Part shown: in pieces, positions 22,518-52,847 of the stretch
Layout of the letters: every line of letters begins with the position of its first letter
How positions within the stretch are numbered: position 1 is the stretch's first letter
IMG/VR virus record: IMGVR_UViG_3300032288_004964
Coordinates: 124,001 to 188,000 of that record
Direction: 5' to 3' (one strand)
Length of the DNA stretch: 64,000 nucleotides
Translations under genes and position numbers: made by a program
The notes under the pieces: generated by a model
Told to the model about the DNA's origin: nothing
What the model saw: the letters and a program-made list of their open reading frames with translations, nothing else
Databases searched by the model: none

Positions 22518-22682
22518 ATGAGAAAATTAGAATCTGAATTATCCTATTATAAAGTTTTAATTAATTCTCAGTATGGTACAAATACCAGTACAACAATGTT
22601 AGATAAAGCCTATCAACTAAGAAGAAAAATTATCACTGTAAAAAATAGAAAAAATAAAATTAAAAAGATATTTAATATATGA
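22518..22682 (+). CDS. Small protein containing family-B DNA polymerase motif B plus R-tag
   Basis: KVLINSQYG (KxxxNSxYG); C-terminal NRKNKIKKIF; start moved to ATG 22518. Confidence 0.55.
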   Translation: MRKLESELSYYKVLINSQYGTNTSTTMLDKAYQLRRKIITVKNRKNKIKKIFNI

Positions 22683-23008
22683 TAGATAGATGGGATTGTC
22701 AAAGAGTTGTTTGTATAAAAGAATATAAAACTCTTAAAATAGGTAGTCATTATGATATTAAGGGTAGAGGTAATTTAGAATTTAATGCTGATAAAGAAGT
22801 TGGTGATAAAAGAGGATATGGATATTGTGTAGAAGATGGTCTCTATGGTTCCTACTCTGGTAAAAAAGATTGGTGGAAATTACCATATGCTGAGAAAGTT
22901 AAGTGGTATTATTTTACTGAGGAAGAAATGTCTGAATATTTTATAACAGAAGAAGAAGATTATAAAGTATATTTAAGAGACGAAAAACTAAAACAATTGC
23001 TTAATTAA
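22679..23008 (+). CDS. Hypothetical protein with C-terminal R-tag
   Basis: Ends LRDEKLKQLLN. Confidence 0.7.
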   Translation: MIDRWDCQRVVCIKEYKTLKIGSHYDIKGRGNLEFNADKEVGDKRGYGYCVEDGLYGSYSGKKDWWKLPYAEKVKWYYFTEEEMSEYFITEEEDYKVYLRDEKLKQLLN

Positions 23009-26733: not shown

Positions 26734-27210
26734 ATGATTAGTAGATGGTTTGATTTTGATCCGTTTGAAAGTAAGATGAAGAAGTCTGCGGGAGTTATTA
26801 TTATATTAAATGGACAAAAGGTTCTACTTTGTCATCCAACTAACTCAAGATGGTTTGGTACTTACTCATTTCCTAAAGGTGGACTAAATAAAGGAGAAAC
26901 AGAAATAGATGCTGCTATTAGAGAATTAAGAGAAGAATCATCAATTGTTATTGATAAATCTAAAATTACAAATCCAAATAGTCCTATTATTGTTGATTAT
27001 GTCAATAAAAAAGGTGAAAAAAAGTATAAACAACTTTATTTATATACAGTTTATATAAATGATATTTCTGAAATTGGATTAGATTCTGAAATAATTCCAA
27101 AAGAAAAACTACAACTATCCGAGATTGATTGGTGTGGATTTTTACCTAAACAAGAAGCCAAACATAGAATTTTCTATAGAGTTGTTCATCTGTTAGATAT
27201 GATAAACTAA
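26734..27210 (+). CDS. Nudix hydrolase
   Basis: PKGGLNKGETEIDAAIRELREES Nudix box. Confidence 0.88.
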   Translation: MISRWFDFDPFESKMKKSAGVIIILNGQKVLLCHPTNSRWFGTYSFPKGGLNKGETEIDAAIRELREESSIVIDKSKITNPNSPIIVDYVNKKGEKKYKQLYLYTVYINDISEIGLDSEIIPKEKLQLSEIDWCGFLPKQEAKHRIFYRVVHLLDMIN

Positions 27211-27246
27211 ATACTATTTTATAGTATAATAAATAAAAATATTATT

Positions 27247-27591
27247 ATGCTTGATAAAATTGAATTAGATTTAAATAATCCTATATTTGTCGCTTATGTT
27301 GATGTTAAAAATATGAGTAGACAATCGGCAGAAGAATATCTTATCAGAACTAAAGAAAATTTTGAAATTTACAAAAATATCACCGTTTGGACAATTGCTT
27401 CTGATCAAACTAAAATTGAATGTGTTTATGATGGTAAGTCCAAAATTAGAGAAAAAGAATTAAATGACTTAATAAAAGAAATAAATACAAGAATAGATAT
27501 AATGTCTCAATCACATTCTTTTGAAGATTTTAAGATAAATATCAGAGATTGGAGAATAAATAATATTATAGATGGCGATAACCAAAAATAA
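27247..27591 (+). CDS. Small protein with T4 portal (gp20)-like segment plus R-tag
   Basis: IFVAYVDVKNMSRQSAEEYL versus gp20 (V/I)(W/F)Y(V/I)D.GN(M/L)P..KAE.(Y/H); C-terminal IRDWRINNII. Confidence 0.55.
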   Translation: MLDKIELDLNNPIFVAYVDVKNMSRQSAEEYLIRTKENFEIYKNITVWTIASDQTKIECVYDGKSKIREKELNDLIKEINTRIDIMSQSHSFEDFKINIRDWRINNIIDGDNQK

Positions 27592-27977
27592 AACCGAATT
27601 AATTGATAGAACCATATCATTAGAATCCGCTATTGAAGAATACTTTAGTGAAGGATATGATGATTACTATTATGATGATTTTTACTATGGTTGTTGTTGC
27701 TCAGCCTGTAATGGTTATTATACTGATGATTTTGAATATTTAGAAGATGAGAAGTGTAATCTAATTTATTTATTTATTTAGAAGAGGTATATTAATGTCT
27801 TTTGGCAAAAAACCTCAGATTGGTAGAATGATTGATATGAAAACGGTTTATTCAAAGGATATAATGAGACAAAAAAATATAGATATAGTATTAGGTTTGT
27901 CAAAAGAGTTTCAAAAAATAACAATAGGTGATTTATATGAAGAATATAGAAATATTCAGGGGAAGTTGGACAGTTGA
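27572..27977 (+). pseudogene. Gene split by a (TTTA)4 tract (ORFs 27572-27781 and 27795-27977)
   Basis: Removing one TTTA unit at 27765-27780 fuses the two ORFs in frame (LIYLFRRGILMSFGK). Confidence 0.55.
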
Positions 27978-48076: not shown

Positions 48077-50365
48077 ATGAGTTATAGTTACGATAGATTC
48101 TTAAGACCGATAACATCAACCGATAGAAATATACAAATCTTAGATAATACTGGTATTATTAAATATACTATTAATCCATTTTCTGTCGTTGAGTCGATGG
48201 TTTCTAATAATTTATTAAAAATTAATATAAAGGGTGCTAGAATTATAACTATAAACTTTTCTACATCCAATGAAGCTAAGTTAGCTTTACCTAGATTACA
48301 ACAGCAAATTGATACATTAACTCAGAAAGTACCACTTGTAATTGATAAAGATATAAAAAATTATATAGATAGTGTAGTTGGAAATACTGGCACAAGTGGT
48401 TCATCTGGATCATCTGGTACATCTGGTGTTGATGGTACTTTTTATGGGTCAAGTGGATCTTCTGGTGTAAATGGCACATCTGGTGTTTCTGGTGCTACTG
48501 GTGCTACTGGATCTAATGGATCATCTGGTACATCTGGTACATCTGGTATATCTGGTGGATCTTATGATTATAGTAATGGAATAACTTTAACTGGATTAAC
48601 TGTTAGTTTAGGTGGTACACTTAGTCAAACCGTGATATTAAATGGTGATCTAAATGATTTACTTTTCACAGGATTTGATAACTTGGTTTTTACTAGTTCT
48701 GTATTTGATGTTGTTTCTGATCTTATTAGTTTAGATTCAAATGATTCTACTCAAATATTATCTATTAATGATATTACAATAAATGCTGGTGGTCAAATAT
48801 CTTTAAGTGGTGATTCTGGATTGGTTTCCATTGGAAATACACAAGGTTTAGTTTATCAATCTGATTATAAATTAGGATTTGTAACACACTCATTAGTTGA
48901 TAAGGGTTATGTGGATTTCGCAATTGAAGGTGTGTCTAAATACAGAGGAACTTCTAGTACTCAAATTGTTGTACCTGAAGCTGGATATGTTGTAACATTT
49001 ACTACACAAACTAATTTAGCTTATACACCTGGTGAAACTATTGTAATGTATGATACCTATCCAAACCTATATATGATTGATGATTATGTAGAAGATGGTG
49101 TTAGTGGTAATATAATAGGTACAGTTGATTCATATAATATACTTACTGGTAGTATATCAGTTGTTGTTGATTATTCAGAATCTATTGGTAATACATATAG
49201 TTATTGGTATATAAATTTAAGTGGTAAAACTGGTGTTGGTTTAATTGGAGCTACTGGAGCTACAGGTTTCAGTGGTACTAATGGTACTTCTGGTACAAGT
49301 GGGTCATCTGGTACAAGTGGATCATCTGGTACAAGTGGATCATCTGGGACATCAGGTTCTAGTGGAACATATGGTTCTAGTGGATCATCTGGGACATCAG
49401 GTTCTTCTGGTCCTTCTGGTTTATCTGGTACTTCTGGTACATCCGGTACTTCTCAAAATGTTTCTGCTAGTTATATGAGAGGTTCTCGTTCTACTCAACA
49501 AACCACTAATTTAACTATTAATAGTTTAGTTGCCTTTACCCAAACTGATAATTCAACTGGATCTGATATATCATTGAACACATCAACTGGTCAAATTACA
49601 CTTGCTGCAAATAGAACTTATAGATTATTAGCTCAAGTACCAACTTGGGAAGGATTGAGTGGTGCTAGACCATCTTTTAGATGGTATGATGAAACGTCAG
49701 CCTCTTATATAGGTAGTTTATCAGCCGCTTATAATCCAGGTGATGCTGGTGCTTATGGTGCATTTGGTGGCACATCCGATGTTGTTATCACAACAACACA
49801 AACAACAGTTGTTTCTTTTAGAATAGTTAATGGTACTAACTTATCTGGACTAGGTGGTAACGGTGATTTTAGTACAGGTGGTTCTTATCCTTGGTTTGAT
49901 ATTGAAGTTATATCTGGATATGTACCAATAGTTAATGATACAAGTTTATCTTTATCAGAAACACTTACAGTTACTGGTACTGCTTCTTTTAATGGATTAA
50001 CTGTTTTACAAGAAGTATCTGAAGTTATAAATTCAACACCTGGGGCTACTGCATCAACTGTTATATATGACTTCTCAACAGGTTCTAATTGGTATCATTC
50101 ATCTGCTACTACTAACTATACTGCTAATTTTACAAATATTCCAACAGATAATAATAGAGCAACAACTGTTACTATAGTTATAAATCAAGGTTCAACTGCT
50201 TATATACCAACTGCTGTTCAAATAGGTGGTACTCCATCAACTGTTAAATGGGCTGGTGGTACTGCTTCTGGGAATGCTAATCAAGTCGATATAGTTGGAT
50301 TTACATTTATTAGAAGTGGTAATGCCTGGGCTCAAGTCTTAGGACAAATAAACACTTTTGATTAA
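48077..50365 (+). CDS. Collagen-like (Gly-Thr/Ser-Ser) fibre protein
   Basis: Two G-X-Y tracts (GTS/GSS/GAT); C-terminal VKWAGG..GNANQVDIVG..QVLGQ domain. Confidence 0.75.
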   Translation: MSYSYDRFLRPITSTDRNIQILDNTGIIKYTINPFSVVESMVSNNLLKINIKGARIITINFSTSNEAKLALPRLQQQIDTLTQKVPLVIDKDIKNYIDSVVGNTGTSGSSGSSGTSGVDGTFYGSSGSSGVNGTSGVSGATGATGSNGSSGTSGTSGISGGSYDYSNGITLTGLTVSLGGTLSQTVILNGDLNDLLFTGFDNLVFTSSVFDVVSDLISLDSNDSTQILSINDITINAGGQISLSGDSGLVSIGNTQGLVYQSDYKLGFVTHSLVDKGYVDFAIEGVSKYRGTSSTQIVVPEAGYVVTFTTQTNLAYTPGETIVMYDTYPNLYMIDDYVEDGVSGNIIGTVDSYNILTGSISVVVDYSESIGNTYSYWYINLSGKTGVGLIGATGATGFSGTNGTSGTSGSSGTSGSSGTSGSSGTSGSSGTYGSSGSSGTSGSSGPSGLSGTSGTSGTSQNVSASYMRGSRSTQQTTNLTINSLVAFTQTDNSTGSDISLNTSTGQITLAANRTYRLLAQVPTWEGLSGARPSFRWYDETSASYIGSLSAAYNPGDAGAYGAFGGTSDVVITTTQTTVVSFRIVNGTNLSGLGGNGDFSTGGSYPWFDIEVISGYVPIVNDTSLSLSETLTVTGTASFNGLTVLQEVSEVINSTPGATASTVIYDFSTGSNWYHSSATTNYTANFTNIPTDNNRATTVTIVINQGSTAYIPTAVQIGGTPSTVKWAGGTASGNANQVDIVGFTFIRSGNAWAQVLGQINTFD

Positions 50366-50366
50366 T

Positions 50367-52847
50367 ATGTTTAGTAGATTATCATCATTTTCAGGACCAT
50401 TATCGCCTGTTTTTAGACTACCAGGTGGATTTACACTTAATGGTTTAATTTTAAGATATGTTATAGGAGATACTAACTCTTATTCAGGAACTAGTAGTGT
50501 CATCGACTTACAAGGTAATTCTAATGGAACTTTATACAATGGACAAGATATTGTTGGTATTGGTCCAACATATTCACTTAATGGTTACTTAAATTTTGAT
50601 GGAGTCAATGATTATATTATGACAAATACATCACTTAATTCTAAATTGTCACCAGCAAATACATCAACAATAATATCACATTTTATTTGGATATATCCTC
50701 AGGATAATGGTGTTATTGTCACTGAACAAGGTGATACATCTTTAAATGGTGTTGGTTGGCATGATTCACAAATTGAAATAGTTTCAGGAACATTAAAGTT
50801 TGGTGTTTGGAATGGTATAATTATATCTTCGTCTATTTCAATATCTTTATATAATTGGTACTATGTTGGCTTAACTTATGATGGAATAACACTAAGAGGT
50901 TATGTAAATGGTCAACTTGCCGGATCTATTACTGGTAGTAGATCAACTCCTCAATCAGCTGGTAATGGACTACATTATGCTATTGGTGCTAATGATGGTA
51001 CAAGTTTAGGTGACGGTAGTTATGCTAAAATGAAACTTGGTGATTTTCATGTTTATAATACAGCTCTTAGTCAACAACAAATTCTTAATAATTACAATGC
51101 TACTAAAAATGATTATATTTATACAGGTAGTATGTCTATTTGGATTGATGCGAATGACCCAGCGAGTTTTTCAGGTGGTTCAATTAGTGATTTGAGTGGT
51201 AATGGTTATACACACTCTTTAGTTGCTACTTCATCTACAATATTTGGTTTCAAGTCTTTTAATTGCACAGCGGTGTCAAATAATTATATAAGAGTAAACG
51301 GAACAGGTCCATTATTACCTACATCAGGTTATACATATGTTGCTTGGGCAAGAATTTCAGCAGATTCTTCTACATATAGAACATTATATAGAAGTTCTCC
51401 AAATGATCATGCTCTTTTAGTTCAAATAAATACTGATAATTTAGGATTTTGGGATAATGATTCAAATTCTTTTAAAGATTCTGGTTATGATGTAAGCTCA
51501 ATTGAAGAAAAATGGGTTCAATATTCGGTAGTTGGTGATTCATCTAGTAGTATATTCTATATAAATGATGTAGAAGTTGGTGCAACCAATTCCGGTGCTA
51601 GTGGTAATAGACATGATTACTTTGGTGGTATTGATGGACAACCTTTTGGTTATGTTGGTAATATGATGTTATATAATAAAAAATTATCTCAATCTGAAAT
51701 TAAACAAAATTATGATGCTCTTAAAAATGTTTATAAGAATGGTGATTTTGTAATTAGTAATATAGGTATATCTTTACTACCGTCTAATGCTGGTAGTACT
51801 ATTTGGTCCGATTCAAAAGGCAATTTTAATGCCACAATGTCAGGATCGCCATCATATAATAATACTGGTTATACATTTAATGGAACTTCTCAGTATGGTA
51901 GAATTGTTAGTTCTACAGGTATTACCGATTTTACAAATACAAATAATTATACTATCGAGGTATGGACTAAACCATCTTCAGGACAACCAAATTCAACAAC
52001 AACCATTTTGGAAAAATGGAATTTAGGAAATTCATCAAATTATCCTTATACATTAAGATTTACTGAAGGTTCAAGTACTGCTTATTTTGCTTGTTATGAT
52101 GGAACTAATTTCCCTCAAGGTACTTTAACCGGAGTTTCAGTAGGTAACTGGTATCAATTAGTTGGTGTTTTTAATTTCACCACTGATGTTTTAACAGTTT
52201 ATAAAAATGGTATTTCTGCTGGAACTGCAAGTTTAGTTGGGGTTGGTGGTTTAAGTAATACAAGTCCTGTGGGAATTGCTCATAGAGTAAGTATTGACGG
52301 ATCATCTGCTGAGTTTATGTTTAAGGGTTCAATTGGTATTATAAGAATTTATAGTTCTGCTCTCAGCGCCTCTGATGTATCTAAAAACTTTGAGGCAAAT
52401 AGAAATATTTATGGAATTTCAGACTCGATCACTACAACTACTACGACTGTTGCTCCGACAACTACAACTACTACGACTGTTTTTCAAGGTGGTCCAATAA
52501 GTGAAATCTCCGTTAATCTTGGAATTAATGGTGTTGTTTATACACTAGCTGATGGACATGATTTTGAAAGTGGTCCTTTCGAACAAATGTTTTCAACAAC
52601 TACACTAAATATGTTTACTGCGTTAACCAATTATTTAGGTGATACACCTAATGCTGAATTTAATTTAGATATTACTCAAGTATTTGATAATCAAGGAAAT
52701 CTAGATGGTTATTCAATTAATTTATATCTAAGTACCCCAGGGAATGGATACAATGTTGGTGATATTATAACCATACCTGGAAGTGAAATTGGTGGAACCG
52801 ATAACACTGATGATGACTTAATAATAACTGTTACTTCAATATCATAG
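50367..52847 (+). CDS. Multi-LamG (concanavalin A-like) adhesin/fibre tip protein
   Basis: Three repeats of FDG..DY/FNG..Y...W..V...Y.NG...YN.ALS..I..NY; Thr-rich linker; start at MFSRLS (or 50358). Confidence 0.8.
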   Translation: MFSRLSSFSGPLSPVFRLPGGFTLNGLILRYVIGDTNSYSGTSSVIDLQGNSNGTLYNGQDIVGIGPTYSLNGYLNFDGVNDYIMTNTSLNSKLSPANTSTIISHFIWIYPQDNGVIVTEQGDTSLNGVGWHDSQIEIVSGTLKFGVWNGIIISSSISISLYNWYYVGLTYDGITLRGYVNGQLAGSITGSRSTPQSAGNGLHYAIGANDGTSLGDGSYAKMKLGDFHVYNTALSQQQILNNYNATKNDYIYTGSMSIWIDANDPASFSGGSISDLSGNGYTHSLVATSSTIFGFKSFNCTAVSNNYIRVNGTGPLLPTSGYTYVAWARISADSSTYRTLYRSSPNDHALLVQINTDNLGFWDNDSNSFKDSGYDVSSIEEKWVQYSVVGDSSSSIFYINDVEVGATNSGASGNRHDYFGGIDGQPFGYVGNMMLYNKKLSQSEIKQNYDALKNVYKNGDFVISNIGISLLPSNAGSTIWSDSKGNFNATMSGSPSYNNTGYTFNGTSQYGRIVSSTGITDFTNTNNYTIEVWTKPSSGQPNSTTTILEKWNLGNSSNYPYTLRFTEGSSTAYFACYDGTNFPQGTLTGVSVGNWYQLVGVFNFTTDVLTVYKNGISAGTASLVGVGGLSNTSPVGIAHRVSIDGSSAEFMFKGSIGIIRIYSSALSASDVSKNFEANRNIYGISDSITTTTTTVAPTTTTTTTVFQGGPISEISVNLGINGVVYTLADGHDFESGPFEQMFSTTTLNMFTALTNYLGDTPNAEFNLDITQVFDNQGNLDGYSINLYLSTPGNGYNVGDIITIPGSEIGGTDNTDDDLIITVTSIS

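What the first reader, a model, noticed from the sequence alone, without database searches (positions are those of the whole stretch)
27247..27591. Portal (gp20)-like segment in a 114-aa tagged protein
IFVAYVDVKNMSRQSAEEYL matches the conserved YxDxGN(M/L)PxxKAExY stretch of T4-like portals. It is followed by a helix and the tag IRDWRINNII. The gene has its own AAACTA-N15-TATAAT promoter-like element.
Basis: partly seen in the sequence, partly recalled or inferred. Interest (0 to 1): 0.7.

Follow-up and report, generated by a model that had tools for sequence, protein, structure and literature searches.

The report
Free-standing portal clip domain with tag
A conserved 114-residue protein of an uncultured 385-kb phage looks like a cut-out copy of the portal's "clip", the knob where the DNA-packaging motor and the neck dock, and it ends in a short tail motif that about 5% of this phage's small proteins share.

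Summary
The ORF (27247..27591, +) is a real gene under purifying selection. It belongs to an unnamed family: 372 homologues, 159 clusters at 50% identity, all small stand-alone proteins of huge uncultured phages, with no Pfam, PHROG or PDB sequence match.

Family profile against portal profile gives 81-87% probability (P about 1e-5). An independent alignment of nine T4-like portals that excludes this clade gives 69% (P 4.6e-5) over 52 columns. These map residues 15-67 onto T4 gp20 284-357, which is the clip domain (279-358). 439 column-shuffled controls reached at most 24.5 against 38.2.

The AlphaFold model (pLDDT 87) has strand-helix-strand-strand, as the clip does, plus a helical hairpin. 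Portals recur among weak fold matches.

Residues 19-42 correspond to gp20 288-311, a peptide reported to bind terminase gp17 and inhibit packaging.

The "tag" is real: 24 of 434 genes end in R-D/N-x-K-I-x-x-I-L (0.5 expected).

The promoter-like element is at chance level. The Avs4-decoy idea could not be tested.

Most likely function (inferred): a soluble clip mimic that engages terminase or neck proteins.

The parts
27247..27591 (+). Gene for the 114-aa protein (P0001), a member of an unnamed family of small stand-alone proteins of huge uncultured phages
   Evidence: ORF. 372 homologues. 159 clusters at 50% identity, all 41-190 aa. Conserved synteny GreA..SET..NUDIX-target-Cys/Tyr-rich gene..ligase. 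dN/dS 0.23-0.42.
27271..27435 (+). N-terminal clip-like domain (residues 9-63): strand 13-19, helix 25-39, strand 46-52, strand 56-61
   Evidence: AF2 model with pLDDT about 96 in this part. hhalign aligns family columns 16-67 to T4 gp20 284-357, and the clip domain is 279-358. ESM Atlas Portal_T4 cluster: 60 residues at 3.0 A.
27283..27342 (+).
   Evidence: N22 and M23 align with T4 gp20 N291 and M292. Residues 19-42 align with gp20 288-311, the gp17-binding peptide. The family consensus equals the own-portal tip in 10/11 positions.
27436..27585 (+). C-terminal helical hairpin (helices 64-88 and 92-113)
   Evidence: AF2 model. Only generic helical-hairpin fold matches. No similarity to the portal. 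Shared with a second small protein of the genome, G000:C1 206043-206381.
27541..27570 (+). C-terminal tag I-R-D-W-R-I-N-N-I-I (residues 99-108), an instance of the genome-wide motif hydrophobic-R-D/N-x-K/R-I/L-x-x-I/L-I/L
   Evidence: R100 99%, position 104 L/I 98%, position 107 I/L 90% conserved. 24 C-terminal instances in the genome against 0.5 expected. 9 against 0.5 in relative G001.
27204..27230 (+). AAACTA-N15-TATAAT promoter-like element: present, but not distinguishable from chance
   Evidence: Sequence read. Promoter-like sites at the shuffle expectation. The genome's enriched upstream motif is absent here.
27572..27977 (+). Downstream gene that overlaps the target's stop by 20 nt (acidic, Tyr- and Cys-rich). 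It is one 125-129-aa gene in relatives, but here it is split into 27572..27781 and 27795..27977
   Evidence: Alignment with L002 and L003 orthologues. The overlap is conserved in relatives.
22679..23008 (+). Second tagged gene in the window (109 aa, ends ...L-R-D-E-K-L-K-Q-L-L-N)
   Evidence: Tag scan.

Best explanation
The gene encodes a free-standing, shortened relative of the clip domain of the T4-type portal protein, fused to a helical hairpin that ends in a C-terminal motif used by many small proteins of this phage group.

Shown:
- It is a real gene under purifying selection, in a large family found only in huge uncultured phages.
- Residues about 15-67 align with T4 gp20 284-357, the clip domain, and have the same order of secondary-structure elements.
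- The loop-helix stretch (residues 19-42) is the counterpart of gp20 288-311, and it keeps N291 and M292 as N22 and M23.
- The tag is a genome-wide C-terminal motif carried by otherwise unrelated proteins.

Inferred:
- In T4 this clip tip and helix are where the large terminase gp17 docks, and later the neck adaptor gp13. The isolated 288-311 peptide binds gp17 and blocks packaging.
- By analogy, the protein most likely presents a soluble copy of the clip tip to a clip ligand, either the 713-aa large terminase or the neck adaptor.
- This would hold or time that ligand, or block that of a competing phage.
- The tag would tie the protein to a partner or place shared with the other tagged proteins.
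For: - Gene and family.
- Profile-profile match to own-clade portals: 80.7%, P 1.3e-5.
- Match to nine other T4-like portals without this clade: 68.6%, P 4.6e-5, 52 columns, family 16-67 against gp20 284-357. With the own portal added: 86.7%, P 4.4e-6.
- Nulls: 439 column shuffles reached at most 24.5, the reversed alignment 13.6, the real one 38.2.
- Genome-wide HMMER scan: the portal is the only non-self hit of the N-domain profile (E 1.8e-4). 2000 shuffled portals reached at most 9.3 bits against 18.0.
- Family consensus at the loop equals the portal tip in 10/11 positions.
- AF2 model: pLDDT 87, strand-helix-strand-strand plus hairpin.
- Portals among fold matches: BFVD ranks 8, 9, 10, plus 'capsid assembly protein' entries of portal length at 21, 28, 46. 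ESM Atlas Portal_T4 cluster, 60 residues at 3.0 A. AFDB ranks 16 and 22.
- Published function of the gp20 clip tip: PMC4493910 and PMC12929587.
- Tag.
Against: - No Pfam Portal_T4 match for this protein, and Portal_T4 is not among the 25 families that most of the 103 members match (55 further weak families were not listed). No PDB sequence match to any portal at E <= 10.
- HMMER scores the clip-tip piece alone at only 5-7 bits. The reciprocal search (portal clip profile against the genome) ranks the target second among non-self hits, at E 0.43.
- Part of the 18-bit HMMER signal comes from a second, non-collinear portal stretch (146-192).
- All fold matches have TM below 0.5.
- The loop is only moderately conserved. 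A close orthologue (L007) has N-L-S-S-E-T-A-N-E.
- T4's R295 and K296 correspond to Q26 and S27 here.
- The gene lies among non-structural genes, 115 kb from the portal.
- No binding evidence of any kind exists.
Confidence: 0.4

Rival explanations
1. Immune decoy. The clip-like domain imitates the part of the portal seen by host portal sensors (Avs4, Avs11). It soaks them up or blocks them without activating them.
For: Portal-like domain. The gene sits among early-type, non-structural genes. Avs4 and Avs11 sense portals, and Avs4 recognises portal monomers.
Against: Avs sensors are described as recognising whole folds over extended interfaces, not short motifs, and a 55-residue clip is a small part of a portal. 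No defence or anti-defence gene was recognised next to it. The Avs4-portal interface could not be read. No direct test was possible.
Confidence: 0.12
2. Portal-ring modulator. In portals the clip sheet is built from one strand of one subunit and two of its neighbour. A free clip could pair with portal subunits by the same strand exchange, so as to chaperone, cap or limit ring assembly, or it could form a small ring of its own.
For: Inter-subunit three-stranded clip sheet in T4. Same three strands in the model. Low pTM (0.53) despite high pLDDT, and a long helical hairpin that could oligomerise.
Against: AF2 closes the sheet within one chain. No oligomer or portal-complex prediction was run. 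The conserved tip motif is better explained by a ligand shared with the portal than by portal-portal contacts.
Confidence: 0.12
3. Unrelated small alpha/beta regulator, for example of DinI-like fold. The portal resemblance would then be convergence on a common strand-loop-helix capping motif.
Against: DinI (PF06183) is not among the 25 Pfam families that most of the 103 members match. Two independent portal profiles hit the same region far above the shuffled nulls. The alignment spans the whole clip, and conserved family positions (Y42, T46, W48, T55, G63) fall on conserved portal positions.
Confidence: 0.15
4. The tag defines the function. The protein is one of about 24 cargo or client proteins routed by the C-terminal motif to a common destination (capsid interior, a hub protein, a membrane or a compartment). 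The clip-like domain is merely the body of one such client.
For: The tag is the most conserved element of the family (R100 99%). It is shared by unrelated small proteins in this genome and in relatives. Tagged genes form tightly coupled arrays.
Against: The partner of the tag is unknown. In the model the tag's hydrophobic face packs against helix 2 rather than being free. This reading does not explain why the portal tip motif is the family consensus.
Confidence: 0.15

Closest known systems
Clip domain of the T4-type portal protein (gp20 residues 279-358; Pfam Portal_T4 PF07230)
   Same: Same order of elements: strand, tip loop, helix alpha6, two strands. Profile-profile alignment of residues 15-67 to gp20 284-357. 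N22-M23 correspond to N291-M292. Conserved Y, T, W, T and G positions coincide.
   Different: 114 aa instead of 520-570. No wing, stem or crown. About 15-20 residues between the helix and the hairpin are missing. No Pfam hit. It is encoded far from the structural genes, alongside a normal full-length portal.
Synthetic gp20 peptide 288-311, which binds terminase gp17 and inhibits T4 DNA packaging (cited in PMC4493910)
   Same: Residues 19-42 are the aligned counterpart, and they sit exposed at a strand-helix junction.
   Different: This is a natural, folded, conserved protein and not a peptide. The basic pair R295-K296 is Q-S here (Q-R in the family consensus and in the own portal). Binding is untested.
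DinI (RecA-modulating SOS protein, PF06183)
   Same: Same small strand-helix-strand-strand-helix topology. It is the best solved-structure match.
Phage-encoded molecular mimics and decoys (for example the DNA mimic Ocr; from my own knowledge, not tested here)
   Same: The concept is the same: a small early-region protein that copies the surface of another molecule to capture its ligand.
   Different: It would mimic one of the phage's own structural proteins rather than DNA or a host protein. I found no described portal-mimic family.

Membership tests
T4-type portal protein (Portal_T4, PF07230) | Match to the family HMM above the curated cut-off | tested here: not met
   No Portal_T4 hit for the protein at E <= 0.1, and Portal_T4 is not among the 25 families that most of the 103 members match at E <= 1. 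The genome's true portal scores 189.6 bits.
T4-type portal protein (Portal_T4, PF07230) | Full clip-stem-wing-crown architecture in a chain of about 500 aa or more | tested here: not met
   114 aa, and all 159 family clusters are 41-190 aa. The C-terminal half shows no similarity to the portal.
Portal clip domain (as a stand-alone homologue) | Sequence-profile similarity to the clip region, above controls | tested here: met
   hhalign 80.7%. 68.6% over 52 columns against portals excluding the own clade, and 86.7% with it included. Nulls reached at most 24.5 against 38.2. The portal is the only non-self hit in the genome-wide scan.
Portal clip domain (as a stand-alone homologue) | Three strands plus one helix in the order strand-helix-strand-strand, superposable on the clip | tested here: inconclusive
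   The order of elements matches. Portals recur among fold matches, but with TM <= 0.44. No solved portal appears in the listed PDB matches. Direct superposition on 3JA7 was not possible.
Portal clip domain (as a stand-alone homologue) | Binds the clip's ligands (large terminase, neck adaptor) | not testable with these tools
   The one complex prediction (target with terminase 1-460) returned no verdict. This needs a bench test.
DinI family (PF06183) | Family HMM match | tested here: not met
Avs4/Avs11 decoy (anti-defence) | Binds or blocks a portal-sensing STAND NTPase | not testable with these tools
   The interface paper is not held and no assay is available.
Gene with its own sigma-70-type promoter | A -35/-10 pair better than the background of the region | tested here: not met
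   70 sites found against 69.2 expected. This pair has 3/6 matches at -35 and a 15-nt spacer. The genome's enriched upstream motif is absent.

The most novel reading that the evidence does not exclude
Huge phages related to the 630-640-kb megaphages LR756502 and LR745206 use a short C-terminal peptide (hydrophobic-R-D/N/E-x-K-I/L-x-x-I/L-L, then stop) as a common address or docking signal on about 5% of their proteins. One of these tagged proteins is a domesticated copy of the portal clip. It acts as a soluble decoy for the packaging motor, the neck or a portal-sensing host immune receptor. Both the tag system and the use of a phage's own structural-protein fragment as a regulator or decoy would be new.
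Probability: 0.25. Interest if true: 0.85.

Novelty: new variant of a known kind. Interest (0 to 1): 0.7.

Why it matters
Portals are known as 12-fold rings of large subunits, and I found no description of a free-standing clip domain. If the protein does engage the terminase or the neck, it would be a natural, genetically encoded version of the gp20 288-311 peptide that blocks T4 packaging. That would give a handle on how very large phages time or police DNA packaging, or on how they hide the portal from host sensors.

Separately, the C-terminal motif shared by about two dozen unrelated small proteins points to an unrecognised sorting or hub-binding system in a widespread group of uncultured huge phages. 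It would turn many 'hypothetical proteins' into one testable class.

Tried and rejected
- Sequence libraries. Pfam, PHROGs and PDB sequence searches with the single protein and with profiles found nothing usable. The feature search of the protein atlas found only the protein's own kind.
- 'Antirestriction protein' label. JGI gives this name to two clusters, but no Pfam, PHROG or PDB sequence match supports it.
- First AF2 run. With 14 sequences it was poor (pLDDT 51). It was replaced by the run with 103 sequences.
- PDB fold searches. They were dominated by generic helical hairpins or weak DinI and thioredoxin-like matches.
- Covariation between each phage's portal tip and its family member. 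Only 7 genome pairs could be built, and the portal tip is almost invariant. One suggestive coincidence was found: LR756502 has L-P-R-Q in both. This was too little for a test, and ten further contigs held no portal.
- Reciprocal HMMER search with the portal clip profile: the target reached only E 0.43.
- Complex prediction of the protein with the N-terminal 460 residues of the large terminase: no verdict, so it counts neither for nor against binding.
- Promoter reading: rejected.
- T4-type late promoter TATAAATA: not present upstream.
- Literature on portal decoys or on the tag: nothing found. The Avs4 structure paper is not held.
- Paralogy as the origin of the tag: rejected. The tag-less bodies share no BLASTP similarity.
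- A nucleotide-level signal as the origin of the tag: rejected. Synonymous codons vary.

Full report
**Where the gene sits**

The window is bases 124001-188000 of a 385,333-bp virus record with about 28% GC. The ORF at 27247..27591 (+) encodes 114 residues. It lies in a run of same-strand genes that includes a GreA-like factor, two NUDIX hydrolases and an ATP-dependent ligase. The genome's true T4-type portal (567 aa) and its large terminase (713 aa) lie about 100-115 kb away.

**The gene is real and belongs to a large, unnamed family**

- A word-indexed search found 372 homologues. Most are 140-144 aa, with a low-complexity N-terminal extension that this subgroup lacks.
- An exhaustive profile search found 159 clusters at 50% identity. 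All are small stand-alone proteins of 41-190 aa, and none has portal length.
- The neighbourhood GreA - SET - NUDIX - target - Cys/Tyr-rich gene - ligase is conserved on contigs of up to 170 kb.
- dN/dS against four orthologues is 0.23-0.42.
- Among deposited phage genomes only the 642-kb and 635-kb megaphages LR756502 and LR745206 carry it. These came from a French lake and a Japanese subsurface sample.
- No Pfam, PHROG or PDB sequence match exists for the protein, for profiles of the family, or for its 103 diverse members scanned one by one.

**The portal resemblance**

This phage's portal carries I-P-I-K-G-M-S-R-Q-R-A-E-E-Q-I where T4 gp20 carries Y-V-D-T-G-N-M-P-A-R-K-A-A-E-H-M. The target has Y-V-D-V-K-N-M-S-R-Q-S-A-E-E-Y-L. 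Pairwise BLASTP gives only 8/13 identities (E 0.009), and a typical 143-aa member gives E 0.59. On that basis alone I would have called it chance. Profiles change the picture:

- The family alignment (A3, 103 sequences) against an alignment of own-clade portals gives hhalign probability 80.7%, P 1.3e-5.
- I then built an independent alignment of nine T4-like portals that excludes this clade: T4, RB43, KP179, SP1, Bue1, S-RIM2, S-SCSM1, P-TIM68 and Cygsa01. It gives 68.6%, P 4.6e-5, over 52 columns that pair family positions 16-67 with T4 gp20 284-357. With the own portal added the probability is 86.7%.
- As controls, 439 column-shuffled versions of that portal alignment scored at most 24.5 (median 13.6) and the reversed alignment 13.6, against 38.2 for the real one.
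- In an unbiased HMMER scan of all 1410 six-frame ORFs of the genome, the N-domain profile hits only itself and the portal (18.0 bits, E 1.8e-4; next ORF 7.1 bits). 2000 shuffled portals reached 9.3 bits.
- The family consensus at the loop, G-[LM]-S-R-Q-R-A-E-E-x-I, equals the portal tip in 10 of 11 positions.

**Caveats on that resemblance**

- HMMER's 18 bits come from two non-collinear pieces (portal 146-192 and 284-305). The tip alone gives 5-7 bits.
- The reciprocal search with a portal clip profile puts the target only second among non-self hits, at E 0.43.
- No portal appears in the PDB sequence searches.
- The loop is only moderately conserved, at 40-60% per position.

**What the matching portal region is**

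In the T4 portal structure the clip domain is residues 279-358, three beta-strands and helix alpha6, exposed outside the capsid. Its tip residues N291, M292, R295 and K296 face the terminase gp17. The double mutants N291A-M292A and R295A-K296A abolish packaging, and M292I is cold-sensitive. A 24-residue peptide, 288-311, binds gp17 and inhibits packaging (PMC4493910). After packaging, the C-terminal arm of the neck adaptor gp13 inserts between alpha6 helices of neighbouring clips and contacts R295 and K296 (PMC12929587).

By the alignment, target residue n corresponds to gp20 residue n+269 through the strand, loop and helix. N22-M23 are therefore N291-M292, Q26-S27 are R295-K296, and residues 19-42 are the counterpart of the inhibitory peptide. 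The aligned block (284-357) is essentially the whole clip domain, with about 15-20 residues missing between the helix and the hairpin.

**Fold**

With the deep alignment, AlphaFold2 gives pLDDT 87 (about 96 for residues 10-60). The elements are strand 13-19, helix 25-39, strands 46-52 and 56-61, then helices 64-88 and 92-113. A first run with 14 sequences was poor. The N-domain thus has the clip's order of elements.

- Portals recur elsewhere. In BFVD, entries named portal stand at ranks 8, 9 and 10 and 'capsid assembly protein' entries of portal length at ranks 21, 28 and 46, with probabilities of 0.80-0.97.
- In the ESM Atlas a Portal_T4 cluster aligns 60 residues (7-67) at 3.0 A. That is slightly better than a DinI cluster (57 residues, 3.1 A).
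- In the AlphaFold DB clusters, portals stand at ranks 16 and 22.
- All TM-scores are below 0.5, so the fold evidence is supportive and not decisive.

**The tag**

The last helix ends in I-R-D-W-R-I-N-N-I-I. R100 is 99% conserved across the family, position 104 is L or I in 98%, and position 107 is I or L in 90%.

- Scanning the whole genome, 24 of 434 crude genes end, within 8 residues of the stop, in [RK]-[DENQ]-x-[KR]-[ILVM]-x-x-[ILVM]-[ILVM]. Only 15 matches lie elsewhere in 118,523 residues, so 0.5 would be expected at C-termini (Poisson 1e-31).
- I chose the pattern after seeing three examples. The test of C-terminal against internal positions is independent of that choice.
- Codons vary synonymously, so the constraint is on the protein.
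- With the tag removed, the 24 proteins share no BLASTP similarity. The ten of them scanned have no Pfam domain above cut-off.
- Many tagged genes sit in tightly coupled arrays.
- A relative at 61% identity (G001, 396 kb read) has 9 such ends against 0.5 expected. Tagged neighbours occur in five other relatives, LR756502 among them.
- One tagged protein of this genome (206043-206381) shares the whole C-terminal hairpin with the target but has a different N-terminal body.
- I could not identify the tag's partner.

**The promoter**

The element AAACTA-N15-TATAAT is there (27204-27230), but sigma-70-like sites occur at exactly the shuffle expectation. The genome's own strongly enriched upstream motif, TTAATATATA, stands before 152 of 434 genes (11.5-fold), including the portal and the terminase. 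It is absent upstream of this gene. The gene is probably co-transcribed with its upstream neighbours.

**How it most likely works**

Shown: a conserved small protein whose N-domain is a relative of the portal clip, carrying a clade-wide C-terminal motif.

Inferred: it offers a soluble copy of the clip tip to something that normally binds the portal clip, and the tag ties it to a partner shared with the other tagged proteins. The most likely such ligand is the large terminase or the neck adaptor. I put about 0.75 on the clip relationship and about 0.4 on the whole statement.

Rivals are a decoy for portal-sensing Avs proteins, a modulator of portal ring assembly through the clip's inter-subunit strand pairing, an unrelated DinI-like regulator, and a tag-defined client protein. 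The single complex prediction with the terminase gave no verdict and is not evidence either way.

**Comparison and novelty**

It is not a portal. It fails the Pfam model and lacks wing, stem and crown. It resembles one portal domain. I found no described free-standing clip domain or portal mimic. I therefore class it as a new variant of a known kind. The tag system is the more novel, and unexplained, element.

Noticed in passing
G000:C1, whole genome (window instances: 22679..23008 and 27247..27591): Genome-wide C-terminal motif, hydrophobic-R-D/N-x-K-I/L-x-x-I/L-L then stop, on 24 of 434 genes (0.5 expected). The carriers are unrelated small proteins of 70-249 aa, often in tightly coupled arrays at 191.9-195.9, 206.0-207.2, 233.8-234.9, 252.9-253.5 and 365.6-371.8 kb. 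It is also enriched in relative G001 (9 against 0.5) and seen in LR756502. The partner is unknown.
   Followed up: partly
G000:C1 206043-206381 (L127:1044-1382) and G000:C1 339449-339823 (L128:977-1327): Two further small proteins end in R-D-W-K-[IL]-x-x-I-L-K. The first shares the target's whole C-terminal helical hairpin (E 2e-4 to the family profile) but has a different N-terminal body.
   Followed up: partly
window 27572..27781 and 27795..27977: The gene that overlaps the target's stop by 20 nt is a single 125-129-aa gene in relatives (acidic, Tyr- and Cys-rich, then a conserved C-terminal part). Here it is split into 69-aa and 60-aa ORFs. This may be a frameshift, a pseudogene or a natural split.
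   Followed up: partly
G000:C1, upstream of 152 of 434 genes (for example the portal at -28 and the terminase at -31): A strongly enriched upstream motif, consensus ATTTAATATATAnTA (11.5-fold). It has two preferred positions, about -30 and about -12 from the ATG. It is probably this phage's main promoter element. No Shine-Dalgarno-like signal is evident.
   Followed up: partly
L001 (own portal), residues 146-192: The family N-domain profile also matches a second portal stretch, in the wing (I-T-x-W ... V-E-I-I-Y-D-D, 9 bits). It is non-collinear with the clip match. It may be chance or an internal similarity within the portal.
   Followed up: no
G000:C1 317023-317340 (-) (inside L129): A 105-aa ORF is the best non-self hit of the portal clip profile (12.2 bits, E 0.01). 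It might be another clip-like fragment.
   Followed up: no
P0052 and P0086 clusters (homologues of the target): JGI names these family members 'antirestriction protein'. The Pfam, PHROG and PDB sequence searches gave no match that supports that name.
   Followed up: yes
window 48077..52847: Two large neighbouring proteins carry collagen triple-helix repeats (762 aa) and Laminin_G_3/concanavalin-like domains (829 aa). They are probably fibre or receptor-binding proteins. Proteins of 1716 and 1676 aa nearby have no Pfam match.
   Followed up: no
BFVD entry A0A8D9FQH8 (uncultured marine phage, 324 aa): This is the best viral fold match of the model (E 1.3e-4, 103 columns). It is an uncharacterised longer protein that may contain the same domain fused to something else.
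   Followed up: no
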